Of a stretch of DNA of 64,000 nt, positions 5,738 through 60,870 are shown piece by piece; the stretch's first letter is position 1; each line of letters starts with the position of its first letter. The stretch is from Octopus sinensis. Taxonomy: Eukaryota. The notes beneath the pieces were generated by a model. The model ran no database searches, had not been told where the DNA came from, and worked only from the letters and a program-made list of their open reading frames with translations. The translations under genes and the position numbers were made by a program. The stretch is from NCBI RefSeq assembly GCF_006345805.1, contig NC_043011.1, forward strand, positions 37,956,464 to 38,020,463, read 5' to 3'.

Positions 5738-6693
5738 TCACATCGACAATGCTCTTCTCAATACGTGTGATGTACCAGTTAAGACAATCTTTTGCACTTC
5801 TTGCAGGGATGGTAAGCCAGGGATCATTCTCATATAATTTTCGGTTCCCTTCTTGATCATTCCTAGTGCTCCTACGATCACTGGTATTGTAACCGCCTTG
5901 AGATGCCCCATTTTCTCAATTTCAATGAGTAGGTCTTTATATTTTCTGAGCTTGTCAAACTCTTTCGCTGAGATATTATGATCACAGGGGATGCTCATGT
6001 CGATCAATAAGCAAACTTTATTGTTTTGGTCTTTCACAACAATATCTGGTTTATTGGCCTTGATGGTTCGGTCTGTATGTACTGGAAAGTCCCACAGAAT
6101 GGTTACATTTTCTCCTTCAGTTACAGCCTCAGGGTGGTGATTATACCACTTGTCGGCAGTTTTGATATTGTAATGCCGACTTATTAGCCAGTGGAGATAT
6201 TGGCCAACTCTGTCATGTCTTAATTTATACTCCACTGGTGCTAAACTTTACATCCAGAGATTAGGTGGTCCACTGTTTCAATCATGTCGTTGCAGAATCG
6301 GCATTTTGGGTCAGCTCCATTTTTCATCACATTGGCCTGGTAGTTCCGGGTTAATAGGCTTTGGTCTTGAGCAGCCAGGATGAAACCTTCGCTCTCTGCT
6401 TTTAGCCCTGAGCTCCGCAGCCACTGATGGGTTTGCTTCTGGTCAACATCAGCTTGTTTGCTGCGGGTCACATATTTGCCGTGCAGAGGTTTCTCCTCCC
6501 ACCTATCAGCCAATTGCTCGTGCGCTTTTTTCATTGCCATCATTTTCACCTTCTTTCCAACAATAGTTGCCGTACTTCCCTCGGGTTGTTCAGTTTGGGT
6601 ATCCTGCACGAGATCAATAGCAAATTTTTTGCTTTCCTTGATGATAGAATGAAGCTTCTTTCGTCTCTCGTGATTTTCCACGAGCTTTAGCAT
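5738..6693 (-). pseudogene. CCHC zinc finger and PD-(D/E)xK restriction-like endonuclease of the R4/Dong element
   Basis: CRFCNDMIETVDHLISGC, RHDRV, KPDIVVKD...LIDMSIP...KEFDKLRKY. It is split across two ORF calls (6241-6693 and 5738-6235). Confidence 0.92.
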
Positions 6694-6933
6694 CCAGTCA
6701 TTCGATATTTCGAGATATTTTGCCAGTCCAATTGTGGTTGTTTTGTAAGCTAGTTCAAATTGGATCAGGCCTCGACCCCTCTTGGGCTCTGGGAAGGTAA
6801 AGGCGATCTACGTCTGCCTTTGGGTGGTGCATCCTATTACAACTCAGTAGCTTGCGTATTTTCCTATCTATATTCTTTACTTCACTCATATTCCAGTTCA
6901 ACACATTGTAGCTATAAGTAACAACTGGAACTG

Positions 6934-7902
6934 CTAAGGATTTATAGCTAACACCTTGTTACGTGCATTTAGTTCAGATTTCAGGACTGCACGAACTCTC
7001 CTATAACATTCCTTCCTGATTTTCTCTTTCATGCTTGCATGCTGAATACCAGGGCCTTCATTTATCCCTAAATATTTGTATGTCTGTTCTTGCTCAAGCT
7101 CTCTTATGACTGTGTCAACATCTAACACGACTGAATTTGTGGTCTTCACTTTCCCTTTCTGGAAAGTGGCCTTGGCACACTTTTCAAGTCCAAACTCCAT
7201 CCCGATGTCATCGCTGAATGCTTTCACGCTGCGCAATAGGCCTTCAAGTTCATTATTGTCTTTACCATAATGTTTTAAGTCATCCATATAAAATAGATGG
7301 CTTATTTTTTTATTGGCAATTTTATACCCATACCCTGTTCTGTTTAATTCACTTGTAAGGGGTATTAGGGCTATGCAGAATATTAAAGGTGAAAGTGAGT
7401 CACCTTGAAAAATTCCACAGTTGATGTTTATATTTTCTGAGGCAAGTACTCCATTAGAGTGGTATAATTGGAGATTCGTATTCCACAACGACATATTGTG
7501 CTTCAGGAAGTTTGAAATCACAGGGGAAATTTTAAAGATGTCCAGCGATCTCAAGATCCATGGATGCGGTATACTGTCGAAGGCCTTTTTATAGTCAATC
7601 CATGCGGTGCTGAGATTTCTGCGCTTGTTGTGACAGTTCTCAAGGATCATACGATTGATTAGCAGTTGATCTTTGCATCCGTAAGAGCCTCGGCGGCACC
7701 CTTTTTGTTCAATGGGGAAAATATCGTTCTTCTCCATGAATGCATATGTTTTCTCCGCCAGGATAGATGTTAGGATTTTATACGTGGTGGATAGACAGGT
7801 TATAGGCTGATAGTTTTTTGGAAGGTTGGTTTCGTTATTCTTTGGGAGTAGGTAAGTAATGCCACTTGCTAACCATTCAGGTGTTTTCTTTTGGTCTCTC
7901 AA
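6934..7902 (-). pseudogene. Reverse transcriptase domain of the R4/Dong element
   Basis: Motifs YQPITCLSTTYKILT, QKGCRRGSYGCKDQL, AWIDYKKAFDSIPH, GIFQGDSLSPLIFC, HLFYMDDLK, FGLEKC and YKYLG. Confidence 0.95.
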
Positions 7903-8939
7903 AATTCCATTGAGCAGCTGAACTAGCTTACCGTGTGCGCACGGGAGCGATGCGAGCCAGAATTCGGCACCCTATCTTTACCGGGGGATTTCCAATTATG
8001 GGCCTTCGTGAGTGCCTTTCTTAGGTCTGCTATTGTGATGTCTTCCCATGCTTGTTGTTGTAAATTTGGTAGGATCCTTCAGTTTGTATAATCCAGTCTG
8101 CATTTATGTTGTACGTCTTCTTGTCACTCCAAATCCTTTCCCAAAAGTTTTGAACTTCTTCATGGGAGGGGGGTCTTTAACGGTTACTTTCTCCTTCCCT
8201 ATTTCTCTGTAGAATATTTTGGCATTGGATGTGAACAGCTTATTTTGCTTGTAAAACTTGTTTCTCTTCTCAAATCTTCGTATTCTTTGGGCTTTTGCTT
8301 GGACTTTTTGTTTCAGCGTTTCTTTTATTGATATCAGTTCTTCTCTTGGTGAGGATCCAAATTTTCTCTTCATCTTTCTTCCTGTTCTGGATCTTACATC
8401 ATTTCCACATATTAGTTCATTTAATATTGATATTTCCCCTCTCATAAATTCAATCTCTTTTTCAATTTTACTTCTCCAGGTTTTTATTTCTTCCCAGGTT
8501 TTGTTTTCTTTGTTTTTTCGGGGGAATACAGCTGGTTTTAATTGCCCTAGCAGAAGCGTAAATAATTTCATTTAACTCAGTAAAATCAGGTTTTAATTCT
8601 CGTATTATTTCATTTGTTACATAGTTGCCAATTTGGATTTGTTTTTTTATTTTGGTTTGTATTTGAGAGTTTATGAAGCGGTTCTCTATCATTCATACTT
8701 GTATGTCTTACAACTTCAAGCGTATTCAGGATTTTCTGCCTCATTTCTGCCATAGACTCTCTGTGTTCTTCAGCAAATGCGAGATCTTCAGTTACTGTTG
8801 TTTTTTCGTTTTCCTGGCTATCTTTAACAGGTACAATAGAATTTCTTGTATCTTCAGGCCTTTGCGTACTTTGGTCAGATGGCAGTCTTTCAATTAAGCC
8901 TCGTGGCGGGCTATACTGTTCATTTGATTCTTCATTTCC

Positions 8940-19573: not shown

Positions 19574-19988
19574 CAGACAAAATACCTATTTCTTTACTAC
19601 CCACAAGGAGCTAAACACAGAAGGGACAAACACGGACAGACAAACGGATTAAGTCGATTATATCGACTCCAGTGCGTAACTGGTACTTATTTAATCGACC
19701 CCGAAAGGATGAAAGGCAAAGTCGACCTCGGCGGAATTTGAACTCAGAACGTAGCGGCAGACGATATACCCACGAGGGGCTAAACACAGAGTGGACAAAC
19801 AAGGTCAGACAAACGGATTGAATCGATTACATCGACCCCAGTGCGTACCTGGTACATAATTTATCGAACCCGAAAGGATGAAAAGCAAAGTCGACCTCGG
19901 CGGAATCTGAACTCAGAACGTAACCGCAGACGAAATACCACTAAGCATTTTGCCCGGCGTGCTAACGTTTCTACCAGCTCGCTGCCTT
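19574..19988 (-). mobile_element. SINE family A head-to-tail dimer
   Basis: Two consecutive bodies, with only the rightmost retaining the full head. Confidence 0.85.
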
Positions 19989-22396: not shown

Positions 22397-22428
<32 letters not shown>

Positions 22429-22431
<3 letters not shown>

Positions 22432-23830
22432 CACAATCAAGGAACGGCCATAATAGGCCATTCACCCACTAGAAATAACAGCCAAAAAGCTTCACCGCAA
22501 AATAACATTAATTCTGTAAACCAGGAGAAAATTAAAAAAACATTTACCCTGAAATTCCTTATACGATGCACCGTTTCGTCTACTGTTTAATGGTAAGCTA
22601 ACCTGATTAAATTAAATCAAGTCAATCTACCATAGGCCCTTAGATTCATCAGTAAGGAATAGCCAAATCGGAACAGATATTTTTCAACGAGGCATTCACG
22701 TCCATGCCTCGCCAATATCTGACCTAAAATTTTCAAATCGTCGCACTCGCGCCAAATTTATCGGCAGCAAATAAATATAAGCCGCCGATTCCATTACGGA
22801 ACTAACCAGAAAATTCATAATTAATCAATATAGGGAGGCAAAAAAATTTTGTAGAATTCTTTAGCCCCCAGCGGCCTAGTGGGAAAAAATTAAATAGTCA
22901 TAAACCATTTTTAAGTTCAATATCACAATCAAGGAACGGCCATAATAGGCCATTCACCCACTAGAAATAACAGCCAAAAAGCTTCAACCGCAAAATAACA
23001 TTAATTCTGTAAACCAGGAGAAAATTAAAAAAACATTTACCCTGAAATTCCTTATACGATGCACCGTTTCGTCTACTGTTTAATGGTAAGCTAACCTGAT
23101 TAAATTAAATCAAGTCAATCTACCATAGGCCCTTAGATTCATCAGTAAGGAATAGCCAATCGGAACAGATATTTTTCAACGAGGCATTCACGTCCATGCC
23201 TCGCCAATATCTGACCTAAAATTTTCAAATCGTCGCACTCGCGCCAAATTTATCGGCAGCAAATAAATATAAGCCGCCGATTCCATTACGGAACTAACCA
23301 GAAAATTCATAATTAATCAATATAGGGAGGCAAAAAAATTTTGTAGAATTCTTTAGCCCCCAGCGGCCTAGTGGGAAAAAATTAAATAGTCATAAACCAT
23401 TTTTAAGTTCAATATCACAATCAAGGAACGGCCATAATAGGCCATTCACCCACTAGAAATACAGCCAAAAAGCTTCAACGCAAAATAACATTAACATATT
23501 CTGTAAACCAGGAGAAAATTAAAAAAACATTTACCCTGAAATTCTTATACGATGCACCGTTTCGTCTACTGTTTATTGGTAAGCTAACCTGATTAAATTA
23601 AATCAAGTCAATCTACCATAGGCCCTTAGATTCATCAGTAAGGAATAGCCAAATCGGAACAGATATTTTTCAACGAGGCATTCACGTCCATGCCTCGCCA
23701 TATCTGACCTAAAATTTCAAATCGTCGCACTCGCGCCAAATTTATCGGCAGCAAATAATATAAGCCGCCGATTCCATTACGGAACTAACCAGAAAATTCA
23801 TAATTAATCAATATAGGGAGCCAAAAAAAT
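22429..23830 (-). repeat. Left (inverted) block of ~492-bp hammerhead-ribozyme tandem array, ~2.85 units
   Basis: Unit starts (tcacaatcaagg) at 22431, 22923 and 23415, a period of 492. The block is the reverse complement of the unit in 23831-30318 and is preceded by (TA)n. Confidence 0.97.
22554..23646 (-). ncRNA. Three type I hammerhead motifs on the minus strand (inverted block)
   Basis: Reverse-complement motifs (attccttatacgatgcaccgtttcgtcta...tagattcatcagtaaggaat) at 22554-22660, 23047-23153 and 23541-23646. Confidence 0.82.
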
Positions 23831-24097
23831 TGTGATATTGAACTTAAAAATGGTTTATGACTATTTAATTTTTTCCCACTAGGCCGCTGGGGGCTAAAGA
23901 ATTCTACAAAATTTTTTTGCCTCCCTATATTGATTAATTATTAATTTTCTGGTTAGTTCCGTAATGGAATCGGCGGCTTATATTTATTTGCTGCCGATAA
24001 ATTTGGCGCGAGTGCGACGATTTGAAAATTTTAGGTCAGATATTGGCGAGGCATGGACGTGAATGCCTCGTTGAAAAATATCTGTTCCGATTTGGCT

Positions 24098-27000
24098 ATT
24101 CCTTACTGATGAATCTAAGGGCCTATGGTAGAGATGACTTGATTTAATTTAATCAGGTTAGCTTACCATTAAACAGTAGACGAAACGGTGCATCGTATAA
24201 GGAATTTCAGGGTAAATGTTTTTTTAATTTTCTCCTGGTTTACAGAATTAATGTTATTTTGCGGTTGAAGCTTTTTGGCTGTTATTTCTAGTGGGTGAAT
24301 GGCCTATTATGGCCGTTCCTTGATTGTGATATTGAACTTAAAAATGGTTTATGACTATTTAATTTTTTCCCACTAGGCCGCTGGGGGCTAAAGAATTCTA
24401 CAAAATTTTTTTGCCTCCCTATATTGATTAATTATGAATTTTCTGGTTAGTTCCGTAATGGAATCGGCGGCTTATATTTATTTGCTGCCGATAAATTTGG
24501 CGCGAGTGCGACGATTTGAAAATTTTAGGTCAGATATTGGCGAGGCATGGACGTGAATGCCTCGTTGAAAAATATCTGTTCCGATTTGGCTATTCCTTAC
24601 TGATGAATCTAAGGGCCTATGGTAGATTGACTTGATTAATTTAATCAGGTTAGCTTACCATTAAACAGTAGACGAAACGGTGCATCGTATAAGGAATTTC
24701 AGGGTAAATGTTTTTTTAATTTTCTCCTGGTTTACAGAATTAATGTTATTTTGCGGTGAAGCTTTTTGGCTGTTATTTCTAGTGGGTGAATGGCCTATTA
24801 TGGCCGTTCCTTGATTGTGATATTGAACTTAAAAATGGTTTATGACTATTTAATTTTTCCCACTAGGCCGCTGGGGGCTAAAGAATTCTACAAAATTTTT
24901 TTTGCCTCCCTATATTGATTAATTATGAATTTGTGGTTAGTTCCGTAATGGAATCGGCGGCTTATATTTATTTTCTGCCGATAAATTTGGCGCGAGTGCG
25001 ACGATTTGAAAATTTTAGGTCAGATATTGGCGAGGCATGGACGAATGCCTCGTTGAAAAATATCTGTTCCGATTTGGCTATTCCTTACTGATGAATCTAA
25101 GGGCCTATGGTAGATTGACTTGATTTAATTTAATCAGGTTAGCTTACCATTAAACAGTAGACGAAACGGTGCATCGTATAAGGAATTTCAGGGTAAATGT
25201 TTTTTTAATTTTCTCCTGGTTTACAGAATTAATGTTATTTTGCGGTTGAAGCTTTTTGGCTGTTATTTCTAGTGGGTGAATGGCCTATTATGGCCGTTCC
25301 TGATTGTGATATTGAACTTAAAATGGTTTATGACTATTTAATTTTTTCCCACTAGGCCGCTGGGGGCTAAAGATTCTACAAAATTTTTTTGCCTCCCTAT
25401 ATTGATTAATTATGAATTTTCTGGTTAGTTCCGTAATGGAATCGGCGGCTTATATTTATTGCTGCCGATAAATTTGGCGCGAGTGCGACGATTTGAAAAT
25501 TTTAGGTCAGATATTGGCGAGGCATGGACGTGAATGCCTCGTTGAAAAATATCTGTTCCGATTTGGCTATTCCTTACTGATGAATCTAAGGGCCTATGGT
25601 AGATTGACTTGATTTAATTTAATCAGGTTAGCTTACCATTAAACAGTAGACGAAACGGTGCATCGTATAGGAATTTCAGGGTAAATGTTTTTTTAATTTT
25701 CTCCTGGTTTACAGAATTAATGTTATTTTGCGGTTGAAGCTTTTTGGCTGTTATTTCTAGTGGGTGAATGGCCTATTATGGCCGTTCTTGATTGTGATAT
25801 TGAACTTAAAAATGGTTTATGACTATTTAATTTTTTCCCACTAGGCCGCTGGGGGCTAAAGAATTCTACAAAATTTTTTTTGCCTCCCTATATTGATTAA
25901 TTATGAATTTTCTGGTTAGTTCCGTAATGGAATCGGCGGCTTATATTTATTTGCTGCCGATAAATTTGGCGCGAGTGCGACGATTTGAAAATTTTAGGTC
26001 AGATATTGGCGAGGCATGGACGTGAATGCCTCGTTGAAAAATATCTGTTCCGATTTGGCTATTCCTTACTGATGAATCTAAGGCCTATGGTAGATTGACT
26101 TGATTTAATTTAATCAGGTTAGCTTACCATTAAACAGTAGACGAAACGGTGCATCGTATAAGGAATTTCAGGGTAAATGTTTTTTTAATTTTCCCTGTTT
26201 ACAGAATTAATGTTATTTTGCGGTTGAAGCTTTTTGGCTGTTATTTCTAGTGGGTGAATGGCCTATTATGGCCGTTCCTTGATTGTGATATTGAACTTAA
26301 AAATGGTTTATGACTATTTAATTTTTTCCCACTAGGCCGCTGGGGGCTAAAGAATTCTACAAAATTTTTTTGCCTCCCTATATTGATTAATTATGAATTT
26401 TCTGGTTAGTTCCGTAATGGAATCGGCGGCTTATATTTATTTGCTGCCGATAAATTTGGCGCGAGTGCGACGATTTGAAAATTTTAGGTCAGATATTGGC
26501 GAGGCATGGACGTGAATGCCTCGTGAAAATATCTGTTCCGATTTGGCTATTCCTTACTGATGAATCTAAGGGCCTATGGTAGATTGACTTGATTTAATTT
26601 AATCAGGTTAGCTTACCATTAAACAGTAGACGAAACGGTGCATCGTATAAGGAATTTCAGGGTAAATGTTTTTTTAATTTTCTCCTGGTTTACAGAATTA
26701 ATGTTATTTTGCGGTTGAAGCTTTTTGGCTGTTATTTCTAGTGGGTGAATGGCCTATTATGGCCGTTCCTTGATTGTGATATTGAACTTAAAAATGGTTT
26801 ATGACTATTTAATTTTTTCCCACTAGGCCGCTGGGGATAAAGAATTCTACAAAATTTTTTTTGCCTCCCTATATTGATTAATATGAATTTTCTGGTTAGT
26901 TCCGTAATGGAATCGCGGCTTATATTTATTTGCTGCCGATAAATTTGGCGCGAGTGCGACGATTTGAAAATTTTAGGTCAGATATTGGCGAGGCATGGAC

Positions 27001-30000
27001 GTGAATGCCTCGTTGAAAAATATCTGTTCCGATTTGGCTATTCCTTACTGATGAATCTAAGGGCCTATGGTAGATTGACTTGATTTAATTTATCAGGTTA
27101 GCTTACCATTAAACAGTAGACGAAACGGTGCATCGTATAAGGAATTTCAGGGTAAATGTTTTTTTAATTTTCTCCTGGTTTACAGAATTAATGTTATTTT
27201 GCGGTTGAAGCTTTTTGGCTGTTATTTCTAGTGGGTGAATGGCCTATTATGGCCGTTCCTTGATTGTGATATTGAACTTAAAAATGGTTTATGACTATTT
27301 AATTTTTTCCCACTAGGCCGCTGGGGGCTAAAGAATTCTACAAAATTTTTTTGCCTCCCTATATTGATTAATTATGAATTTTCTGGTTAGTTCCGTAATG
27401 GAATCGGCGGCTTATATTTATTTGCTGCCGATAAATTTGGCGCGAGTGCGACGATTTGAAAATTTTAGGTCAGATATTGGCGAGGCATGGACGTGAATGC
27501 CTCGTTGAAAAATATCTGTTCCGATTTGGCTATTCCTTACTGATGATCTAAGGGCCTATGGTAGATTGACTTGATTTAATTTAATCAGGTTAGCTTACCA
27601 TTAAACAGTAGACGAAACGGTGCATCGTATAAGGAATTTCAGGGTAATGTTTTTTTTAATTTTCTCCTGGTTTACAGAATTAATGTTATTTTGCGGTTGA
27701 AGCTTTTTGGCTGTTATTTCTAGTGGGTGAATGGCCTATTATGGCCGTTCCTTGATTGTGATATTGAACTTAAAAATGGTTTATGACTATTTAATTTTTT
27801 CCCACTAGGCCGCTGGGGGCTAAAGAATTCTACAATTTTTTTTGCCTCCCTATATTGATTAATTATGAATTTGTGGTTAGTTCCGTAATGGAATCGGCGG
27901 CTTATATTTATTTTCTGCCGATAAATTTGGCGCGAGTGCGACGATTTGAAAATTTTAGGTCAGATATTGGCGAGGCATGGACGTGAATGCCTCGTTGAAA
28001 AATATCTGTTCCGATTTGGCTATTCCTTACTGATGAATCTAAGGGCTATGGTAGATTGACTTGATTTAATTTAATCAGGTTAGCTTACCATTAACAGTAG
28101 ACGAAACGGTGCATCGTATAAGGAATTTCAGGGTAAATGTTTTTTTAATTTTCTCCTGGTTTAACAGAATTAATGTTATTTTGGCGGTTGAAGCTTTTTG
28201 GCTGTTATTCTAGTGGGTGAATGGCCTATTATGGCCGTTCCTTGATTGTGATATTGAACTTAAAAATGGTTTATGACTATTTAATTTTTTCCACTAGGCC
28301 GCTGGGGGCTAAAGAATTCTACAAAATTTTTTTGCCTCCCTATATTGATTAATTATGAATTTTCTGGTTAGTTCCGTAATGGAATCGGCGGCTTATATTT
28401 ATTTGCTGCCGATAAATTTGGCGCGAGTGCGACGATTTGAAAATTTTAGGTCAGATATTGGCGAGGCATGGACGTGAATGCCTCGTTGAAAAATATCTGT
28501 TCCGATTTGGCTATTCCTTACTGATGAATCTAAGGGCCTATGGTAGATTGACTTGATTTAATTTAATCAGGTTAGCTTACCATTAAACAGTAGACGAAAC
28601 GGTGCATCGTATAAGGAATTTCAGGGTAAATGTTTTTTTAATTTTCTCCTGGTTTACAGAATTAATGTTATTTTGCGGTTGAAGCTTTTTGGCTGTTATT
28701 TCTAGTGGGTGAATGCCTATTATGGCCGTTCTTGATTGTGATATTGAACTTAAAAATGGTTTATGACTATTTAATTTTTTCCCACTAGGCCGCTGGGGGC
28801 TAAAGAATTCTACAAAATTTTTTTTGCCTCCCTATATTGATTAATTATGAATTTTCTGGTTAGTTCCGTATGGAATCGGCGGCTTATATTTATTTGCTGC
28901 CGATAAATTTGGCGCGAGTGCGACGATTTGAAAATTTTAGGTCAGATATTGGCGAGGCATGGACGTGAATGCCTCGTTGAAAAATATCTGTTCCGATTTG
29001 GCTATTCCTTACTGATGAATCTAGGGCCTATGGTAGATTGACTTGATTTAATTTAATCAGGTTAGCTTACCATTAAACAGTAGACGAAACGGTGCATCGT
29101 ATAAGGAATTCAGGGTAAATGTTTTTTTAATTTTCTCCTGGTTTACAGAATTAATGTTATTTTGCGGTTGAAGCTTTTTGGCTGTTATTTCTAGTGGGTG
29201 AATGGCCTATTATGGCCGTTCCTTGATTGTGATATTGAACTTAAAAATGGTTTATGACTATTTAATTTTTTTTCCCACTAGGCCGCTGGGGCAAAGAATT
29301 CTACAAAATTTTTTTGCCTCCCTATATTGATTAATTATGAATTTTCTGGTTAGTTCCGTAATGGAATCGGCGGCTTATATTTATTTGCTGCCGATAAATT
29401 TGGCGCGAGTGCGACGATTTGAAAATTTTAGGTCATATATGGCGAGGCATGGACGTGAATGCCTCGTTGAAAAATATCTGTTCCGATTTGGCTATTCTTA
29501 CTGATGAATCTAAGGGCCTATGTAGATTGACTTGATTTAATTTAATCAGGTTAGCTTACCATTAAACAGTAGACGAACGGTGCATCGTATAAGGAATTTC
29601 AGGGTAAATGTTTTTTTAATTTTCTCCTGGTTTACAGAATTAATGTTATTTTGCGGTTGAAGCTTTTTGGCTGTTATTTCTAGTGGTGAATGGCCTTTTA
29701 TGCCGTTCCTTGATTGTGATATTGAACTTAAAAATGGTTTATGACTATTTAATTTTTTCCCACTAGGCCGCTGGGGGCTAAAGAATTCTACAAAATTTTT
29801 TTGCCTCCCTATATTGATTAATTATGAATTTTCTGGTTAGTTCCGTAATGGAATCGGCGGCTTATATTTATTTTCTGCCGATAAATTTGGCGCGAGTGCG
29901 ACGATTTGAAAATTTTAGGTCAGATATTGGCGAGGCATGGACGTGAATGCCTCGTTGAAAAATATCTGTTCCGATTTGGCTATTCCTTACTGATGAATCT

Positions 30001-30088
30001 AAGGGCCTATGGTAGATTGACTTGATTTAATTTAATCAGGTTAGCTTACCATTAAACAGTAGACGAAACGGTGCATCGTATAAGGAAT
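24098..30088 (+). ncRNA. Thirteen tandem type I hammerhead motifs, one per unit
   Basis: Motifs at 24098-24205, 24592-24697, 25080-25186, 25569-25674, 26061-26166, 26549-26655, 27040-27145, 27532-27637, 28022-28126, 28513-28619, 29004-29109, 29494-29597 and 29982-30088. The copy at 29494 has GAAC instead of GAAAC, which may be an assembly indel. Confidence 0.82.
25080..25186 (+). ncRNA. Type I hammerhead ribozyme (exemplar unit)
   Basis: Stem I ATTCCTTA 25080-87 pairs with TAAGGAAT 25179-86. Core CTGATGA 25088-94. Stem II ATCTA 25095-99 pairs with TAGAC 25158-62 (A.C at the closing pair) and encloses a long nested hairpin. GAAA 25163-66. Stem III CGG/TCG with palindromic TGCA loop. Predicted cleavage triplet GUA, cut after 25178. 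Confidence 0.85.
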
Positions 30089-30310
30089 TTCAGGGTAAAT
30101 GTTTTTTTAATTTTCTCCTGGTTTACAGAATTAATGTTATTTTGCGGTTGAAGATTTTTGGCTGTTATTTCTAGTGGGTGAATGGCCTATTATGGCCGTT
30201 CCTTGATTGTGATATTGAACTTAAAAATGGTTTATGACTATTTAATTTTTTCCCACTAGGCCGCTGGGGGCTAAAGAATTCTACAAAATTTTTTTGCCTC
30301 CCTATATTGA

Positions 30311-30360
<50 letters not shown>

Positions 30361-30396
30361 TATGTATATATATATATAATATATATATATATATAT

Positions 30397-30427
<31 letters not shown>

Positions 30428-30508
30428 GTATGTATATTTAATTTTATTTGTTGGGGAATAAAAATTCCGGCATAACAGGGGTTCAAATTCTCAATGAAGA
30501 AATATATA

Positions 30509-31559: not shown

Positions 31560-31760
31560 TTTCAAATTTGGCACAAGGGCAACTTGTTAGGATGAGGGGT
31601 ATATCGATTGCATTGACCCCAGTGCTCAACAGATATTTATTTTACCGACCCAGAAATGATGAACGGTAAAGTCGACCTCGACGGAATTTGAACCCAGAAT
31701 GTTGCGACGAGTGAAGTACACCTAAGCATTTTGCCCGGCGTGCTAACGCTTTTGCTGGGT
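31560..31760 (-). mobile_element. Older SINE family A copy
   Basis: Diverged aagtcgacctcgacggaatttgaac...ttgcccggcgtgctaacg. Confidence 0.7.
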
Positions 31761-32487
31761 CTCTACTGAAATGATTGCTGCGTATATTTGACATAATAAT
31801 CCTTAACGATTCACAACTAAATACATTATTATTCCCAAATGTAAATACTGAAAGAATTAGACAAACAAATAGTGTTATGTTTCAGACAAACAGCTGTAAA
31901 TATTTTAGTAATGATAAAGAGAAAAAGAGGTGAAAAGACATATTGGGGCAGATTAGAAGGAAAATATACTTAGTGACTTCGTTAGGAAATTAGTTTTCCC
32001 TATCGATAAAAACCAAGAGTGGCTGTACTCTGATACAATCTTTATTATTTAGCAAGAACAACACACTTGAAACCAGACGTCGTAGTTGATTGTATGGTAA
32101 GACTGCAGAAAGAGTTAACGAAATCTACAACAGACGACTATGTCTAGAAACCAATACCGTTAACAAATTAATTTTTCAACTCAGAGTCAACATATACACA
32201 AGATCGACAACATGTCACCTTCAAGTGAGAAAAGCAGGAACATTTTCATAATGCAGCACGAACTGAATTCAATCAGGCAGTAAAATTTTATGAAAAGACT
32301 ATATTTCAATGCGTTGCTTACTTTGTATTTATGTATTTCCCCTTTATTGTTGTTATGGTTGTTGTTGTTAGTAATGTTGCTGTTATTATTGTTGTACCGC
32401 CCCAACTTCTCTGCCATGGAGCAAATTTACGATGAAAAGCTTTGCGAATGACAATATTTTTAATATTTGGATATCACAGTATATATA

Positions 32488-33054
32488 TTGGGTTGTCCGG
32501 AAAGTTTGTGCCGATTTATAGTAGCTTACCTTTTGACTTATTTTAGAACATGGTTGACTCCATAAAATAGGATTTTACTACACCTCCATTTAGAGCACAG
32601 TTTAAACTATCTTTTCGTGGAAGAAGTTTTATGTTCCTATAACCTGTGTTAATTTTGTAACCCTTTAAAATGGAAATTAAGAAAGTTCATTTTCGGCACT
32701 TGATGCTTTGGGAACCAGACAAAAATTGCTGCAGCTCAGCTGGGATGTGTTACCACCCACCCTGCATATTCACCAGATATTGCTCCTTCGGATTTTTACT
32801 TACTCAGGTCTCTGCAGAATAGTCTTAATGGAAAAAATTTCAATTCCTTGGATGGCGTAAAAAGATACCTTGATGAATTCTTTGCCATTAAACCACCTCA
32901 ATTCTGGAAAGAGAATATTTTCAAGTTAAAAGAAAGATGGAGACACATTGTGCAACAAAATGGTTCATATTAGGTTGATTAAAATTTTAATGGCAAGTAT
33001 TTATTGACCTTTTCTTTCCTTTAAAAATCGGCACGAACTTTCCAGACAGCCCAA
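32488..33054 (+). mobile_element. Non-autonomous mariner (internal deletion) with TIRs and TA TSD
   Basis: TIR ttgggttgtccggaaagtttgtgccgattt / aaatcggcacgaactttccagacagcccaa, TA on both sides, and HPAYSPDIAPSDFYL motif. Confidence 0.93.
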
Positions 33055-42075: not shown

Positions 42076-43075
42076 TTTTTTTTTTCTTCTGTTTCTCGCC
42101 GAGTGTATTCCGTACACCTAGGGCAGAGAAGCTCATTGTATGCATTCCCAGATTACACTCGCAAATTCACAGATAAATATGTATTTAAAAATTAATAAAT
42201 AAATAAATTCAGGGATGGATGTTGTTTTTCACAGCGATAATGCTCTTCTCAGTACATGAGCCGTTCCAGTTAACATGATTTTTTTGCACTTCCTGTAGGG
42301 ATGGTAAGCCTGGTATCATTTTCAAATAAGTTTCAGTACCTTTTTTCATCATTGCTAGAGATCCTGCAATCACTGGTACTGTAGTCGCCTTGAGATGCCA
42401 CATTTTTTGCAGTTCCTATTAGCTAGTCTCTATATTTACTGATCTTGTCAAATTCCTTCGCCGCTATATTGTGATCGCAATGAATACTCATATCAATTAG
42501 TGAACACATCTTTTTTGTCTGATCTTTTATAATATCCGTTTCATTGGCTTTTATAGCTTTGTCGATATGTACGGGGAAGCCCCATAGAATCGACAGATTT
42601 TCTGCCTCTGTCACAGCTTCAGGATGGTGTTTATACCATTTGTCAGCGGTTTTGATTTTATAACACCGACTTATTGTCCAGTGTAAATACTGGCCGACTC
42701 TGTCATGTCTTGCTTTATACTATACAGATGCTAAGAGTCTACACCCTGAGATTAGGTGGTCTATAGTTTCAATCTCATCGTTACAGTTTCGGCATTTTAG
42801 GTCAGCTCCATTTTGTATAAAATTGGCTTGGTAGTTCCGGGTTAATAAGCTTTTGTTTTGAGAGGCTAATCTGAAACCTTCACTCTCCGCTTTCAGCCCT
42901 GAGCTTCGTAACCATTGGTGCGTGTGTTTCTGGTCGACATCAGCTTGTTTGGTACGGGCCTCATACTTGCCATGCAGAGGTTTCTGTTCCCATCTGTTAG
43001 CTAATTTTTCATGTGCTTGTGTCTTTCCAATTAATTATATTTTCTTTGCAGCAGCAGTTGGCGCATTCCCTTCAA
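42076..43075 (-). mobile_element. 3' fragment of a second R4/Dong subfamily (CCHC + RLE), degraded
   Basis: Clear DNA similarity to 5750-6550 (e.g. ccgactctgtcatgtctt, agttccgggttaataag) with a different 3' UTR. The 5' break abuts a (TAA/TTA)n tract. Confidence 0.88.
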
Positions 43076-44877: not shown

Positions 44878-45385
44878 TAAGGCGGTGAGCTGGCAGAATT
44901 GATTTTACAACAGGAAAAATGCTTAGCGGTCATTCGTCCGTCTTGACATACTGAGTTCAAATTCTAACGAGGCCGACTTTGCTTTTCATCCATTCGGGTT
45001 CGATAAATTAATTACCAGTAAAGCACTAGGGTCGATATAATCGACTAGTCCCTCCCTGCACCTCCCTCCCCCTAAAAATTTGCAGGCGTTGTGTCTTTAA
45101 AAGAAAGGATTATTTTTACTATTATTATTGTTATTTGTATTATTATTGTCATTATCAATGATGTTGCTGGTGTTATTGTGGATGAGGATAATATCATTAT
45201 CACTCACGCCGGGCGAAATGCGGTATTTCGTCTGCCGCTACGTTCTGAATTCAAATTCCGCCGTGGTCGACTTTGCCTTTCATCCTTTCGGGGTCGATTA
45301 AATAAGTACCAGTTACGCACTGAGGTCAATGTGATCGATTTAATTTCTTCCCACAAATTCCAGGCCTTGTACTTCCAGTAGAAAT
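44878..45385 (+). mobile_element. Two SINE family A copies (44878-45110 and 45203-45385)
   Basis: Head and core motifs as in 2466-2712. Confidence 0.75.
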
Positions 45386-48268: not shown

Positions 48269-48802
48269 TTGGGTTGTCCGGTAAGTTCGTGCCGATTTTT
48301 AAAGGAAAGATAAAGGTAAATAAATAATCGTCATTACATTTTTAATAACCAAATATGAATCATTTTGTTGCACAATGCGTCTCCATCTTTCTTTAACTTC
48401 AAAATACCCTCTTCCCAGAATTTAGGTGGTTTCATGGCAAAGAATTCATCAAGGTATCTTTTTACGTCATCCAAGGCATTGAAATTTTTACCATTAAGAC
48501 TATTCTGCAGAGACCTGAATAAGTGGAATTCCGAAGGAGCAATATCTGGTGAATATGGAGGGTGGGGTAACACATCACAGCCGAGCATCAAGTGCCGAAA
48601 ATGAACTTTCTTATCTTCCATTTTAAAGCGTTACAGAATTAACACAGGTTATGGGAACATAAACCTTTTTCCACGAAAAGATAGCTTAAACTGTGCTCTA
48701 AACGGAGGTGTAGTCAAATCCTATTTATGAACTCAACCATGTTCTAAAATAAGTCGAAATTTAAGCTACTATAAATCGGCACGAACTTTCCGGACAACCC
48801 AA
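48269..48802 (-). mobile_element. Non-autonomous mariner, same family, different internal deletion
   Basis: Near-perfect TIRs and TA TSD. ORF 48334-48621 fuses the N-terminus MEDKKVHFRHLML to HPPYSPDIAPSEFHLF. Confidence 0.95.
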
Positions 48803-58039: not shown

Positions 58040-58430
58040 GTCCACAAGGGACTAAACAAGGACAGACAAAGGGATTACGTGGATTACTTAGACCCCAGTT
58101 CGTAACTGGTACTTAAGTTATCGACCCCGAAAGGATGAAAGGCAAAGTCGATCTCGGCGGAATTTGAGCTCAGAACACAACGACAGACGAAATACCTATT
58201 TCTTTACAGCCCACAAGGGGCTAAACACAAAGAGGACAAACAAGGACAGACAAACAGATTAAGTCGATTACATCGACACCAGTGCGTAACTGGTACTTAT
58301 TTAATCGACCCCGAAAGGATGAAAGGCAAAGTCGACCTCGGCGGAATTTGATCTCAGAACGTAGCGACAGACGAAATACTGCTAAGCATTTAGCCCGGCG
58401 TGCTAACGTTTCTGCCAGCTCGCCGCCTTT
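58040..58430 (-). mobile_element. SINE family A head-to-tail dimer
   Basis: Two bodies joined at cagacgaaatacctatttctttac. Confidence 0.85.
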
Positions 58431-59591
58431 TTGATTATTTCATTAGTTTCCTTCTAAAGAGTGTGGCCATGGTGAACATCTTCCTCAACATTCCTTAATT
58501 CAATTGTTTTATAACACTTGTGGCATCTTGTCGGAAGCTTTTTATCTTTTTAATTTCCATCGGTTTCCTGATGGATAACCTTGACATAAAATGATGGAAC
58601 TCGGACGGAATTATTATTTAAATCAATGTTTGAGGTTAGAGTCACTGATATTGGTTGGTTACCTCGCTGCACTTTACATTATACAGGAGTCTCTCAGGAC
58701 TAGACTAAAGCATCATTAGGAAACCGAGAAAATGAGAGATTTTGCCTAGTTGTCTGAAGTAAAAGAATTAAAATCAAATAACCATGAAATTATACCTTAC
58801 TACTGCTGAAATGAAAGATGCGCATCAAAGTAAATGCATTTTTAGCTGTTCTATGCATAACACTAGCACCAGATGGTTATGCTTGGGACATGTGGTACAT
58901 AATCACAGAAAACAACCATAATGCAGTAACGAACGATTTGAAAAGCACATGCATTTGTAGGTGAATATTCTTCAAAATGTTATATCCTCTAAAAACGAAA
59001 GGAAGCATAAAATACAGGAAGTAGTTCTAAATATAATACGTTAGGAAACAAAAACAAGGGCGATTTTGGTTGGAATATTTCTTCTTTAATATATTTTAGA
59101 TGCTCCTTAATTGTATTTGTTTTGCTAAATGATATTTCAATGTACTTCCAAGCTGGCTTTGTATAATTCATAGCGGAATTAAAATATCGGCAAAAATGGT
59201 TGCTCTGATTTGAAACAATGTTTTGTTTTAAATTGTTACTTTAAGTTACCTCTATATGTGTGTCTTATTTTCTATTTGTTTCTTTAAGAAATCAACAAAA
59301 ACTACTTCAGACAATGTACAGAAATCAACATAAAAATATTGTAATTACAATATTTAGAGAGTGATGCTCCAGCATAGATGTCAAGTGATCTTCAAAATGA
59401 AAACTAATAAACGAATTGTACAAAACAGACTACACATTTCACCAAATCTGTTCCCTATATGTACCAGTCTGTTTGCAACCATCTCATTTCTAAGACAAAA
59501 TATTCATAGCACGTAAACAAAATGTGATTAATTATAACTATAACAACAACGAGAGCAACGTGTTATGAAAAGCAGTAAGGGAGGCTTAGAA

Positions 59592-60870
59592 CGGTGGTTC
59601 GCAAAAGGTGTGCCGGGGCGCACTGGTGCGCCACAGAAGATATATAGGTTGCGCCTTGAGATTTTCCAGAGACGTGCATTCAGATATAAAGAAGTAAATG
59701 CATAGCTACTTTCTTATGTTAAATTTATAACAACATCACTCTTCTTTGCAACGAACAGCTAGCTTCGAGCCTGCAAGCAGGTTCGATACGCGTTGCGAAC
59801 ACACGTTTTGAACGAGATTTGAACGACTCTGCAACAGCCAAGCATGCAACAGTATGGCATTTGCAGGCAGTGGTAAGAGACGGGATGTTTTTATTGTGTT
59901 AAACAGGCATTCAGAGTGGAAGTGTTGTTATTTTTTACTCGCACAAAAGTACACCTATACAAAATGGATAGGTTTCTTATTAAAAAGAAGCGTGATATTC
60001 ATGAATATAAACCTGGAAGTGAGCAAAACTTAAGTGAAACAAGTTGTTCAAATAAGAAACTGAAACCGCAGCCTACACGCAAGTACGATTAAGTTATTTA
60101 AGCTTTGGTTTCACATGGATTGGAAGTGAAGACCATCCTTTGCCGCTATGTTTAGTATGTGGATAGAAAATGTCAAAGGAATCATTGCTTCCAAGTAAAC
60201 TCAGCAAACAGCAAACATTTAAAAACTAAACATCCTCAGTTACAACATAAATCTACAATTTATTTTAAAAGATTGTCTGAACAGCAAACTAAAGTGGCAA
60301 ATTCTTTCATAAATAAAATGAGTCTCCGAGAAAGCTTAAATCGCTTCCTACCAAATCATGCCCTACCCCCACTCAAATCCCCCACTCTGGAATGTTCAAG
60401 AATCATTCATCCCCTTCCTCCTCTTTCCCCTCTCAAATCCCCCGCTGCTATATCTACTAACCGTGGATTAATGATGAAACACAAGGAATTGTCACTTCAG
60501 GCTTTCTGGATTTCTGTAAAAGATGAATATGTTTCGATTTCTGAAAAACTTCTTACAATTTTGCTACAATTTTCAACTTCATATCTATGGGAATTGGGAT
60601 TTTCCACCCTTTCTACTATGAAGTACGAAAAGCGAGGAAGACTTACATGCATTGATGAAGAAATATGAGTTTGTCTTTCAAACTTGTACCCAAACATTGA
60701 AGAAATTGCCAAGACACATCGAGCCAACGTTTCTCATGAACTCATGAATGAAGAATCTTAAAGTATGCGTTATTGTCTGTTATTGACTTTAGAAATTTGT
60801 ATATGGTGTGCCCACAATTATTTTTATGGATTCAAGAGCGCCCTGACCTCAAACGAGCCAACAACCACTG
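59592..60870 (+). mobile_element. hAT (Buster/Charlie-type) internal-deletion derivative
   Basis: Ends cggtggttcgc / acaaccactg. Decayed 8-bp TSD gctTAgaa / gttTAgat (nnnTAnnn). N-terminal RKYD..YLSFGF..CLVC...HLKTKH zinc-finger region and C-terminal FW...FSTSYLWELGFS dimerisation region. Confidence 0.85.

What the first reader, a model, noticed from the sequence alone, without database searches (positions are those of the whole stretch)
22429..30318. A 16-unit satellite in which every ~492-bp unit carries a hammerhead ribozyme: candidate cephalopod retrozyme
Seen: each unit contains ATTCCTTA-CTGATGA-[stem II]-GAAA-CGG-TGCA-TCG-TA-TAAGGAAT, with an 8-bp stem I, the complete catalytic core, a GUA cleavage triplet and a 3-bp stem III capped by a palindromic tetraloop. 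There are 13 copies on + and 3 on -. The unit has no ORF, and I found no CUGANGA on the antisense strand. Established: tandem type I hammerheads define newt satellite 2, Schistosoma Sm-alpha, cricket pDo500 and the non-LTR retrozymes of corals, mussels and axolotl, several of which are processed to monomers or circular RNAs. Inference: read-through transcription would be cut at ~490-nt intervals (after 24197, 24689, 25178, 25667, 26158 ... 30080) into monomers that can circularise and be retrotransposed in trans. I cannot check whether this family is already catalogued.
Basis: partly seen in the sequence, partly recalled or inferred. Interest (0 to 1): 0.95.

Follow-up and report, generated by a model that had tools for sequence, protein, structure and literature searches.

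The report
Tandem hammerhead-ribozyme repeat (retrozyme-type array)
A 7.9-kb block of sixteen near-identical 493-bp non-coding repeats, each carrying a complete hammerhead self-cleaving RNA motif, is real and looks like a young member of the already known animal 'retrozyme' class of circular-RNA retroelements, inserted into a TA microsatellite.

Summary
Window 22430-30318 holds 16.1 copies of a 493-bp non-coding unit: 2.9 on the minus strand and 13.2 on the plus. Each unit has a type I hammerhead with all conserved core bases, an 8-bp stem I, a short palindromic stem III and a GUA cleavage site at exactly the positions given. A descriptor scan found one such motif in 40 Mb of random sequence.

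- Stem II is a 68-nt hairpin.
- Its closing pair 10.1-11.1 is an A.C mismatch in 15 of 16 copies (the base is deleted in the sixteenth).
- No Rfam hammerhead model scores it, even at E<=10.

Folding predicts that a lone motif is locked, with the core paired to stem III. Two successive motifs form the classical double hammerhead.

The array sits in a (TA)n tract. The outer end of the inverted arm and the inner start of the direct arm map to the same unit position. This is a twin-priming signature, and it matches insertions of Penelope-like elements.

The parts of the ribozyme flanking the long stem II arm are nearly identical to the self-cleaving Mytilus retrozyme ribozyme.

Verdict: a new member of a known kind (non-LTR retrozyme). 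Not testable here: cleavage, circles, other copies, covariation and the cephalopod attribution.

The parts
22403..22429 (.). Left flank: (AT)13 microsatellite abutting the array
   Evidence: TRF; sequence
22430..23831 (-). Inverted arm of 2.9 units. In its own orientation it runs from consensus position ~298 (inner end) to 224 (outer end), where consensus position 1 is the C of CUGAUGA.
23829..23831 (.). Head-to-head junction. The 3 nt ATT can be assigned to either arm (microhomology). The junction is not a perfect palindrome: consensus ~298 meets consensus 217.
23829..30318 (+). Direct arm of 13.2 units, running from consensus position 217 (inner start) to 329 (outer end)
30316..30437 (.). 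Right flank: (TA)n microsatellite abutting the array
25080..25186 (+). Reference hammerhead domain (107 nt, identical to the consensus). Stem I 25080-25087 pairs with 25179-25186. Core CUGAUGA is at 25088-25094. The stem II arm is 25095-25162, GAA is 25163-25165 and stem III is 25166-25177. A17 is at 25178, with predicted cleavage between 25178 and 25179.
24098..24205 (+). Hammerhead copy, H17 at 24197 (1 substitution and 1 insertion in the distal stem II)
24592..24697 (+). Hammerhead copy, H17 at 24689
25569..25674 (+). Hammerhead copy, H17 at 25667 (1-nt deletion in the 3' strand of stem I)
26061..26166 (+). Hammerhead copy, H17 at 26158
26549..26655 (+). Hammerhead copy, H17 at 26647 (equals the consensus)
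27040..27145 (+). Hammerhead copy, H17 at 27137
27532..27637 (+). Hammerhead copy, H17 at 27629 (lacks A10.1)
28022..28126 (+). Hammerhead copy, H17 at 28118
28513..28619 (+). Hammerhead copy, H17 at 28611 (equals the consensus)
29004..29109 (+). Hammerhead copy, H17 at 29101
29494..29597 (+). Hammerhead copy, H17 at 29589. It has three 1-nt deletions, one of which turns GAAA into GAA, so it is probably dead as written.
29982..30088 (+). Hammerhead copy, H17 at 30080 (equals the consensus)
23541..23646 (-). Hammerhead copy on the minus strand, H17 at 23548 (1 substitution, 1 deletion)
23047..23153 (-). Hammerhead copy on the minus strand, H17 at 23055 (equals the consensus)
22554..22660 (-). 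Hammerhead copy on the minus strand, H17 at 22562 (equals the consensus)

Best explanation
This is a young array of a non-autonomous, non-LTR retrozyme.

Shown.
- There are sixteen near-identical 493-bp non-coding units.
- Each has a complete type I hammerhead.
- The array lies inside a (TA)n microsatellite, with a 2.9-unit arm inverted against a 13.2-unit arm.

Inferred mechanism.
1. The array is transcribed as a multimer.
2. A lone hammerhead is held inactive, because U4-G8 of the core pairs with CAUCG of loop 3 and stem III.
3. In a multimer, the 12-nt quasi-palindromes ACGGUGCAUCGU of two successive units pair into an extended helix III. This is a double hammerhead. It frees both cores, and each cuts after GUA.
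4. [quoted passage not shown]
5. A host tRNA-type ligase circularises the monomers. The lone motif in the circle stays locked, which protects the circle.
6. The reverse transcriptase of a Penelope-like element supplied in trans copies circles or uncut multimers. Copying is primed from a nick in (TA)n at AU-rich spots of the RNA.
7. A second priming event on the other target strand (twin priming) produced the inverted arm.

The A.C mismatch at 10.1-11.1 and the 68-nt stem II probably make cleavage slow.
For: Motif. All conserved core bases are present: C3 U4 G5 A6 U7 G8 A9, G12 A13 A14, A15.1-U16.1 and A17. The three stems are in type I order. The chance rate is about 5e-5 per unit, and the descriptor recovers validated positives.

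Unit. It has no ORF longer than 52 aa and 36.5% GC. Its RNA folds at -144 kcal/mol against -116 +/- 5.5 for shuffles, z = -5.1. In the circular fold, stems I and II are kept.

Dimer mode.
- In the lone domain, stem III pairs have probability below 1%, while the competing core pairing has about 94%.
- Two domains cofold into a double hammerhead at -74.5 kcal/mol, against 2 x -31.6 for two monomers.
- A 600-nt transcript spanning two successive motifs has the double hammerhead as its minimum-energy fold, with both cores unpaired.
- This is the published behaviour of most metazoan type I hammerheads (PMC4209133; PMC7229834).

Relationship to a known active ribozyme. The sequence flanking the stem II arm is ACUGAUGA[A]UCU ... 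GUAGACGAAACG. This is 23/24 identical to the Mytilus Mg353 retrozyme hammerhead, which self-cleaves at about 0.1 per min.

A mismatch at the base of helix II is tolerated elsewhere. Axolotl HHR_Amex2 has U.U there and still cleaves.

Insertion.
- Both flanks are (TA)n, and such runs cover only 4.8% of the rest of the window.
- The outer end of the inverted arm is at consensus 224 and the inner start of the direct arm is at consensus 217-220. Agreement within +/-8 nt of a 493-nt period is expected about 3% of the time.
- Neither outer end is the cleavage site (consensus 91/92). Both lie at ...AUUAU and ...GUGAU, which share AU microhomology with the target.
- Penelope-like elements are described as preferring (TA)n and as forming partial tandems with an inverted 5'-truncated copy upstream (PMC8557442).
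- They are the proposed mobilisers of animal retrozymes.
Against: - No Rfam hammerhead covariance model reports the motif, not even at E<=10 on a 131-nt stretch.
- The 10.1-11.1 pair, described as highly conserved G-C, is A.C in 15 of 16 copies and deleted in the other.
- Helix II is 68 nt instead of about 4 bp plus a loop, so the usual loop1-loop2 tertiary contact cannot be assumed.
- Only one locus is visible. The 493-bp consensus has no other match in the 64-kb window.
- No relative was found in the metagenome, viral or prokaryote collections, or among 5.8 billion predicted proteins searched with a six-frame pseudo-protein.
- The units are about 99% identical, so there is no covariation evidence.
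- No Penelope-like RT or GIY-YIG gene is in the window. The only RT is a LINE type.
- Expression, cleavage and circularisation are entirely inferred.
- Sixteen uncut units in one insertion fit weak cleavage or later DNA-level amplification as well as rolling-circle copying.
Confidence: 0.6

Rival explanations
1. Inert satellite DNA. The unit descends from a ribozyme-bearing repeat, but the hammerhead is now crippled by G10.1->A, the large stem II insertion and the competing core pairing. The array grew by unequal crossing-over or replication slippage, and the inverted arm arose by a DNA inversion with one break in the fragile (TA)n tract. Nothing is cleaved or retrotransposed today.
For: - The A.C mismatch at the base of stem II is present in all copies that keep that base.
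- No Rfam hit.
- The lone-motif fold sequesters the core.
- Only a single locus is seen in 64 kb.
- Near-identity of units is also what array homogenisation gives.
Against: - Every invariant core base and all three stems are intact in the consensus.
- Six of the 16 hammerhead domains equal the consensus, and one full unit, M02, equals the 493-bp unit consensus. This is unexpected for a decayed relic.
- The predicted double hammerhead is energetically strongly favoured.
- An inversion model needs one break exactly at the array/flank boundary. Twin priming gives that boundary for free.
- A base mismatch in helix II is compatible with activity in the axolotl.
Confidence: 0.2
2. The array is not a separate non-autonomous element. 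It is a multimerised terminal repeat (pseudo-LTR) of an autonomous Penelope-like element whose coding body was lost or never copied because of extreme 5' truncation.
For: Penelope-like elements carry hammerheads in their pseudo-LTRs, form tandem and inverted structures and target (TA)n. A 2026 preprint finds that vertebrate retrozyme families are sister to pseudo-LTRs.
Against: - There is no RT or GIY-YIG coding sequence in or next to the array.
- Sixteen exact unit-length repeats are unlike a pLTR-ORF-pLTR layout.
- Hammerheads of metazoan Penelope-like elements are mostly minimal, with no or 1-bp helix III and a bulged base before G10.1. This one has a 4-bp helix III and resembles the mussel retrozyme motif.
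- The distinction from a retrozyme is partly semantic.
Confidence: 0.1
3. Assembly artefact. The copy number, the inverted arm or both are products of long-read misassembly, such as a fold-back chimeric read or a collapsed or expanded repeat.
For: Differences between units are dominated by single-base deletions: 45 deletions, 13 insertions and 20 substitutions in 14 units. Of the deletions, 84% fall in runs of 2 or more bases. This looks like uncorrected long-read error.
Against: - The junction is not a perfect palindrome, as a fold-back read would give. Consensus position ~298 abuts position 217.
- The two arms end in different unit positions, next to ordinary unique flanks.
- The motif itself does not depend on copy number.
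Confidence: 0.05

Closest known systems
Mytilus galloprovincialis non-LTR retrozymes (Mg353; Cervera & de la Pena 2020, PMC7229834)
   Same: - Tandem AT-rich non-coding repeats with one type I hammerhead per unit.
- The ribozyme sequence around the core is nearly identical: ACUGAUGA-(G/A)UCU...GUAGAC-GAAACG...CGU.
- Helix III is palindromic.
- The canonical loop1-loop2 tertiary-contact nucleotides are missing in the mussel. They cannot be assumed here, because stem II is a 68-nt arm.
- The mussel element is proven to self-cleave and to accumulate as circular RNA.
   Different: - The unit is 493 bp, against 350-390 bp.
- There is no similarity outside the ribozyme.
- G10.1 is A here, giving an A.C mismatch.
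- Loop 2 (UUUGU) is replaced by a roughly 60-nt extension of the hairpin.
- Helix III is ACGG-UGCA-UCGU rather than ACG-CG-CGU.
- The cleavage triplet is GUA rather than GUC.
- Activity here is untested.
Newt satellite 2 and axolotl retrozymes (HHR_Amex1/Amex2)
   Same: - Weak helix III capped by a palindromic tetraloop.
- Poor monomer activity and efficient cleavage as a double hammerhead.
- Amex2 has a non-Watson-Crick pair (U.U) at the base of helix II and a GUA triplet, as here.
   Different: - The amphibian units are 330-350 bp, with a short helix II and conserved loop-loop contacts.
- They occur in tens of thousands of copies.
- Their activity and circles are demonstrated experimentally.
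Dolichopoda cave-cricket pDo500 satellite
   Same: A tandem unit of about 500 bp with a type I hammerhead. Both single- and double-hammerhead modes have been proposed, and long multimeric transcripts are processed to monomers.
   Different: - The cricket motif is compact (49 nt).
- Its G10.1-C11.1 pair shows compensatory changes across species.
- No cross-species data exist for the present element.
Pseudo-LTR hammerheads and insertion architecture of Penelope-like elements
   Same: Preference for a (TA)n target, partial tandems, an inverted 5'-truncated copy upstream, and hammerheads that work as dimers.
   Different: - There is no RT/GIY-YIG ORF here.
- The hammerhead is not the minimal type.
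- The bulged nucleotide before a G10.1-C11.1 pair that is typical of those motifs is not present. The extra A here is opposite C11.1.

Membership tests
Metazoan non-LTR retrozyme (Cervera & de la Pena 2020) | Short tandem DNA repeats of a few hundred bp in multiple head-to-tail copies | tested here: met
   16.1 units of 493 bp. Published ranges are 150-450 bp and 51-972 bp.
Metazoan non-LTR retrozyme (Cervera & de la Pena 2020) | One type I hammerhead per unit, in one polarity only | tested here: met
   Descriptor and direct reading. None on the antisense strand.
Metazoan non-LTR retrozyme (Cervera & de la Pena 2020) | No coding capacity and no LTR | tested here: met
   The longest stop-free stretch is 52 aa. 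The flanks are microsatellite, with no terminal repeats other than the units. PBS and PPT motifs were not searched for specifically.
Metazoan non-LTR retrozyme (Cervera & de la Pena 2020) | Low GC (<50%) and a stable, highly self-paired RNA | tested here: met
   GC is 36.5%. The folding z-score is -5.1 against 100 shuffles.
Metazoan non-LTR retrozyme (Cervera & de la Pena 2020) | Expressed and processed to monomeric linear and circular RNAs | not testable with these tools
   No transcript data are available.
Metazoan non-LTR retrozyme (Cervera & de la Pena 2020) | Many dispersed loci in the genome, coexisting with Penelope-like elements | not testable with these tools
   Only 64 kb is visible. 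There is no second locus and no Penelope-like ORF in it. The source genome is not in the searchable collections.
Canonical type I hammerhead (Rfam Hammerhead_1 and relatives) | Conserved core CUGANGA / GAAA / UH, with helices II and III closed and helix I open | tested here: met
Canonical type I hammerhead (Rfam Hammerhead_1 and relatives) | G10.1-C11.1 closing pair of helix II | tested here: not met
   The pair is A.C in 15 copies, and the A is deleted in one. It is described as highly conserved in PMC4209133. A U.U precedent exists in the axolotl.
Canonical type I hammerhead (Rfam Hammerhead_1 and relatives) | Helix II of about 4 bp with a loop 2 that contacts loop 1 | tested here: not met
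   Helix II is a 68-nt imperfect hairpin: 4 bp, then an internal loop, then 7 bp and 11 bp. Tertiary contacts cannot be judged from sequence.
Canonical type I hammerhead (Rfam Hammerhead_1 and relatives) | Short helix III with a palindromic loop (dimer-competent) | tested here: met
   ACGG-UGCA-UCGU forms a 12-bp self-duplex at -17.5 kcal/mol. The double hammerhead is the minimum-energy fold of a two-motif transcript.
Canonical type I hammerhead (Rfam Hammerhead_1 and relatives) | Scores above the curated threshold of a hammerhead covariance model | tested here: not met
   There is no hammerhead family hit at gathering score, nor at E<=10 on 9 kb or on 131 nt. The long stem II insertion is the likely cause.
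Canonical type I hammerhead (Rfam Hammerhead_1 and relatives) | Compensatory changes in the stems among diverged members | tested here: inconclusive
   The units are about 99% identical, and no diverged relative was found.
Canonical type I hammerhead (Rfam Hammerhead_1 and relatives) | Self-cleavage after H17 | not testable with these tools
   Needs in vitro transcription.
Penelope-like-element type insertion | Microsatellite, often (TA)n, target | tested here: met
   (AT)13 lies on the left and (TA)n on the right. The background is 4.8%. See PMC8557442.
Penelope-like-element type insertion | An inverted 5'-truncated copy adjacent to the upstream end of a tandem | tested here: met
   A 2.9-unit inverted arm lies upstream of the 13.2-unit direct arm, with matching unit coordinates 224 and 217-220.
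Penelope-like-element type insertion | A 30-40 bp 'tail' extension at one end | tested here: inconclusive
   The direct arm ends 32 nt past the unit position where the inverted arm begins (consensus ~298 against 329). Whether this is the published 'tail' cannot be decided from one locus.
Penelope-like-element type insertion | RT plus GIY-YIG endonuclease ORF | tested here: not met
   None is present in the array or the window. This is expected for a non-autonomous element.

The most novel reading that the evidence does not exclude
The array is a very recent insertion of an active retrozyme family with an atypical hammerhead: a 68-nt helix II, A.C at 10.1-11.1, and obligate dimer action with a self-locking monomer. 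On this reading, its insertion anatomy is a direct genomic footprint of Penelope-type target-primed reverse transcription on a multimeric or circular ribozyme RNA. That anatomy consists of a (TA)n target, internal AU-microhomology priming away from the cleavage site, and a twin-primed inverted arm. How animal retrozymes are mobilised is still an open question. The 1.4-kb inverted arm would also make read-through transcripts fold into long double-stranded RNA, a possible source of small silencing RNAs against the family.
Probability: 0.3. Interest if true: 0.6.

Novelty: new member of a known kind. Interest (0 to 1): 0.4.

Why it matters
Animal retrozymes are an abundant but little-studied source of ribozyme-made circular RNAs. 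The literature states that their repeats show no motif that reveals which retrotransposon moves them. If other copies in the same genome show the same features, a fresh insertion with readable ends gives structural evidence for the Penelope-like-element hypothesis. Those features are the TA-microsatellite target, priming away from the cleavage site, and the twin-priming inversion. This evidence would be independent of the phylogenetic argument in the 2026 preprint.

The ribozyme is also a natural test case. It shows how much a hammerhead tolerates a non-Watson-Crick 10.1-11.1 pair and a very long helix II. It also shows how a palindromic helix III can switch activity between multimer (on) and circle (off). 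Otherwise it is one more family in a class already known from cnidarians to amphibians, bivalve molluscs included.

Tried and rejected
1. Rfam scans, run three ways: the whole window at gathering score, 9 kb at E<=10, and 131 nt at E<=10. No hammerhead family was reported. The only hits were microsatellite-driven miRNA look-alikes and chance matches.
2. A 991-aa pseudo-protein made from all six reading frames of the unit, searched against 5.8 billion predicted proteins to catch spurious ORFs called on related repeats. No hit.
3. A metagenome scan with CTGATGAATCTA-N40-70-TAGACGAAAC. The one hit (L001) is an AT-rich chance match without stems or repeats.
4. Viral and prokaryote collection scans with the 3' and 5' halves of the motif. 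No hits.
5. Taxon identification through the LINE reverse transcriptase. The best relatives are 70% identical, from unnamed ENA contigs, and share only the RT at 67% nucleotide identity.
6. Taxon identification through a mariner fragment. The named hits are insect SETMAR or Ammar1. The taxon was not resolved by either route.
7. A bulged base between A9 and G10.1, as in Penelope-like-element hammerheads. This was rejected, because that register leaves no helix II. The only consistent register is A10.1 opposite C11.1.
8. A fold-back assembly artefact. This was rejected, because the junction is offset (consensus ~298 against 217) rather than palindromic.
9. A relaxed minimal-hammerhead scan of the rest of the window. 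It gave only one loose chance hit at 182.
10. Whole-unit similarity to the mussel, coral and axolotl retrozymes. None was found outside the ribozyme.
11. Literature searches for a cephalopod retrozyme or a roughly 490-bp cephalopod satellite. Nothing was found in the held library.

Full report
**1. The observation**

Tandem Repeats Finder reports two abutting arrays, both flanked by TA microsatellites:
- 22430-23831, period 492, 2.9 copies, 98% matches;
- 23829-30318, period 490, 13.2 copies, 97% matches.

I built a 493-bp consensus from 14 full units. BLAST of this consensus against the window shows that the first array is the reverse complement of the second. It also shows that the unit occurs nowhere else in the 64 kb.

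All 16 hammerhead domains were located. H17 falls at 24197, 24689, 25178, 25667, 26158 ... 30080 on the plus strand and at 23548, 23055 and 22562 on the minus strand. Six domains equal the consensus, and ten carry 1-3 single-base changes.

Across whole units the differences are 45 deletions, 13 insertions and 20 substitutions. Of the deletions, 84% fall in runs of two or more identical bases. Only two substitutions are shared by more than one unit. So true divergence is at most a few per thousand, and much of the rest looks like long-read noise.

**2. Is the motif more than chance?**

The consensus domain is:

AUUCCUUA CUGAUGA [68 nt] GAA ACGG-UGCA-UCGU A | UAAGGAAU

Every invariant position is present: C3 U4 G5 A6 U7 G8 A9, G12 A13 A14, A15.1-U16.1 and A17. 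Stem I is 8 bp. Stem III is A-U, C-G, G-C, G.U, capped by the palindromic loop UGCA.

I wrote a descriptor that requires CUGANGA, stem II >=4 bp with one mismatch allowed at the base, GAAA, stem III >=3 bp, UH and stem I >=5 bp.
- It hits 12 of the 16 copies. The four misses each have a 1-nt indel.
- It hits nothing else in the window.
- It hits once in 40 Mb of random sequence with the dinucleotide make-up of the unit or the window, about 5e-5 per unit on both strands.
- The same descriptor recovers the mussel and coral retrozyme ribozymes that were shown to self-cleave.

The motif is real.

**3.

(a) Stem II is not a short hairpin. It is a 68-nt imperfect arm: 4 bp, an internal loop, 7 bp, a one-nucleotide symmetric interruption, then 11 bp and a 6-nt loop.

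(b) Its closing pair 10.1-11.1 is A opposite C in 15 copies, and the A is deleted in the sixteenth. The literature calls the G10.1-C11.1 pair highly conserved (PMC4209133).

(c) No Rfam hammerhead model reports the motif. This holds at gathering score on the whole window, at E<=10 on 9 kb and at E<=10 on a 131-nt stretch. The long insertion in stem II is the likely reason. Even so, a curated-model membership test was run and was not met.

**4. Predicted behaviour of the RNA**

Lone domain. For the lone 107-nt domain, the minimum-energy fold keeps stems I and II. It replaces stem III with a pairing of core bases U4-G8 (UGAUG) to CAUCG of loop 3 and the 3' strand of stem III. This fold scores -31.6 kcal/mol, against -28.6 for the catalytic secondary structure. 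In the ensemble, stem III pairs have a probability below 1% and the competing pairs have about 94%.

Two domains. The 12-nt segment ACGGUGCAUCGU is a quasi-palindrome that forms a 12-bp self-duplex at -17.5 kcal/mol. Two domains cofold into the classical double hammerhead at -74.5 kcal/mol, against -63.2 for two monomers. A 600-nt transcript that runs from one motif to the next has the double hammerhead as its minimum-energy structure, with both CUGAUGA cores fully unpaired.

Comparison with the literature. This is the behaviour described for newt and axolotl repeats and for most metazoan type I hammerheads: poor cleavage by a single motif and efficient cleavage by two in tandem.

Whole unit. 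It folds far better than shuffles (-144.4 against -116.2 +/- 5.5 kcal/mol, z = -5.1). Stems I and II survive in the circular fold. This matches the 'stable, highly self-paired' circles reported for retrozymes.

All of this is thermodynamic prediction, not evidence of catalysis.

**5. Relationship to known ribozymes**

The supplement of Cervera & de la Pena 2020 prints four cloned retrozymes.

The mussel Mg353 hammerhead reads ...GCGUCA CUGAUGA GUCU UUUGU AGAC GAA ACG-CG-CGU C|UGGCG. The window's motif shares ACUGAUGA(G/A)UCU on the 5' side and GUAGACGAAACG on the 3' side. That is 23 of 24 positions, about half of which are not core-invariant. No similarity exists outside the ribozyme.

Relative to the mussel motif, which self-cleaves at about 0.1 per min and gives abundant circles, this one has:
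- G10.1->A;
- a roughly 60-nt expansion of loop 2;
- a longer palindromic helix III;
- GUA instead of GUC.

The axolotl HHR_Amex2 motif also has a non-Watson-Crick pair (U.U) at the base of helix II and a GUA triplet. It still cleaves, at 22% per hour as a monomer and much better as a dimer. So the A.C pair lowers the expected rate but does not exclude activity.

**6. Insertion anatomy**

Consensus coordinates below take position 1 as the C of CUGAUGA. Cleavage falls after position 91.

| Arm | Inner end | Outer end |
|---|---|---|
| Inverted arm (own orientation) | ~298 | 224 |
| Direct arm | 217-220 | 329 |

Three nucleotides (ATT) at the junction can belong to either arm.

Three points follow.

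(i) Both flanks are (TA)n, and perfect (TA)>=5 runs cover 4.8% of the rest of the window.

(ii) The outer end of the inverted arm and the inner start of the direct arm coincide to within 5-8 nt of the 493-nt period. This is expected by chance about 3% of the time. It is exactly the geometry of twin priming known from L1 inversions (my own knowledge: Ostertag & Kazazian 2001). In that geometry the second target strand primes internally on the same RNA, and the two cDNAs are joined by microhomology.

(iii) Neither outer end is the ribozyme cleavage site. Both lie at AU-rich spots (...UUAAUUAU and ...GUGAU), which can anneal to a TA-repeat primer. So the template was not a cleaved linear monomer primed at its 3' end. 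It was either a multimer or a circle primed internally.

Penelope-like elements are described as preferring (TA)n, forming partial tandems, often carrying an inverted 5'-truncated copy at the upstream end, and having a 30-40-bp 'tail' (PMC8557442). They are the proposed mobilisers of animal retrozymes.

The 32-nt offset between the inner start of the inverted arm and the end of the direct arm might correspond to that tail. One locus cannot show this.

A fold-back assembly artefact would give a perfect palindrome at the junction. The junction is offset instead.

**7. Surroundings and source**

The window is TE-rich, with 34.6% GC and very dense microsatellites. It contains:
- a degenerate LINE-type element (RVT_1 plus zf-RVT) at 5741-8571, with a second fragment at 42426-43034;
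- mariner-type transposase fragments;
- several copies of a SINE-like repeat of about 170 bp.

No Penelope-like RT or GIY-YIG ORF and no other hammerhead is present.

The best relatives of the LINE RT are 70% identical proteins on unnamed ENA contigs, which share only the RT at the DNA level. The mariner fragment's named relatives are from insects.

The only taxonomic hint is the resemblance of the ribozyme to the Mytilus one. That fits a mollusc but does not prove it.

**8. Comparison with what is known, and novelty**

Tandem repeats with type I hammerheads are the defining feature of the following:
- newt satellite 2;
- Schistosoma Sm-alpha;
- cricket pDo500;
- the non-LTR retrozymes of corals, mussels, axolotl and many other invertebrates;
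- 20 of 31 vertebrate genomes in a 2026 preprint, with consensus lengths of 51-972 bp and up to 300 units per array.

The present array meets every sequence-level criterion of that class. The held literature mentions no cephalopod retrozyme, but that is an absence of mention in an open-access subset, not proof of novelty.

I file the array as a new member of a known kind, with an unusual ribozyme variant: a long helix II and A.C at 10.1-11.1. The most useful new information is the readable insertion anatomy.

**9. Verdict**

| Reading | Confidence |
|---|---|
| Young retrozyme-type array, dimer-acting hammerhead, insertion by target-primed reverse transcription into (TA)n with twin priming | about 0.6 |
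| Inert satellite with a crippled ribozyme | about 0.2 |
| Multimerised pseudo-LTR of a Penelope-like element | about 0.1 |
| Assembly artefact | about 0.05 |

Interest is 0.4. This is a clean, well-formed example of a known class with some instructive peculiarities. It is not a surprise to a specialist.

Noticed in passing
window 5741-8571 (-) and 42426-43034 (-): Degenerate LINE-type retrotransposon. Its RT ORF matches RVT_1 (E 4e-28), followed by a zf-RVT match, and it is split over at least four ORFs by frameshifts. A second fragment of the same family lies 35 kb away. The best database relatives are only about 70% identical and come from unnamed ENA assemblies.
   Followed up: partly
window 48337-48630 (-) and 32704-32970 (+): C-terminal fragments of a mariner-type transposase. 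Pfam gave no hit on the fragments themselves. Homologs of the first fragment carry PF01359 and are named SETMAR or Ammar1 transposase in insects. The second was recognised only by eye.
   Followed up: partly
window 19598-19939; also near 2414-2896, 31645-31881, 45076-45378, 58139-58439: A SINE-like repeat of about 170 bp, present as a tandem pair (88% identical) and as several dispersed copies on both strands. The copies are recognisable by the same translated peptide (…FKFRRGRLCLSSFRGRLNKYQLRTGVD…). Rfam finds no tRNA or 5S relation at gathering score.
   Followed up: no
window 22430-25230: The 2.9 inverted units and the first 2.9 direct units form a near-perfect 1.4-kb inverted repeat. A read-through transcript would fold into long double-stranded RNA, a possible small-RNA source. 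As DNA, it is a potentially unstable palindrome.
   Followed up: no
window 29494-29597 and 27532-27637: Two hammerhead copies look disabled as written. One has GAAA shortened to GAA plus deletions in stems I and II. The other lacks the A at 10.1. Because most differences between units are 1-nt deletions, these may be sequencing errors rather than real variants.
   Followed up: partly
whole window: Microsatellites are extremely dense. Perfect (TA)>=5 runs cover 4.8% of the sequence outside the array. There are also long (ATT)n, (ATC)n, (TGA)n, (CTCT)n and (AC)n tracts.
   Followed up: partly
window 63624-63878: A 116-bp tandem repeat, 2.2 copies at 97% identity, unrelated to the hammerhead unit.
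   Followed up: no
window 60156-60665 (+): A 170-aa open frame whose last ~70 residues resemble, by eye, the C-terminal dimerisation region of hAT transposases. Pfam gave no hit.
   Followed up: partly
L001 5718-5808 (-), metagenome contig Ga0315291_10015722: This was the only exact match to the gapped hammerhead pattern in the metagenome collection. It is an AT-rich chance match with no stems, no repeat and no relation to the unit.
   Followed up: yes
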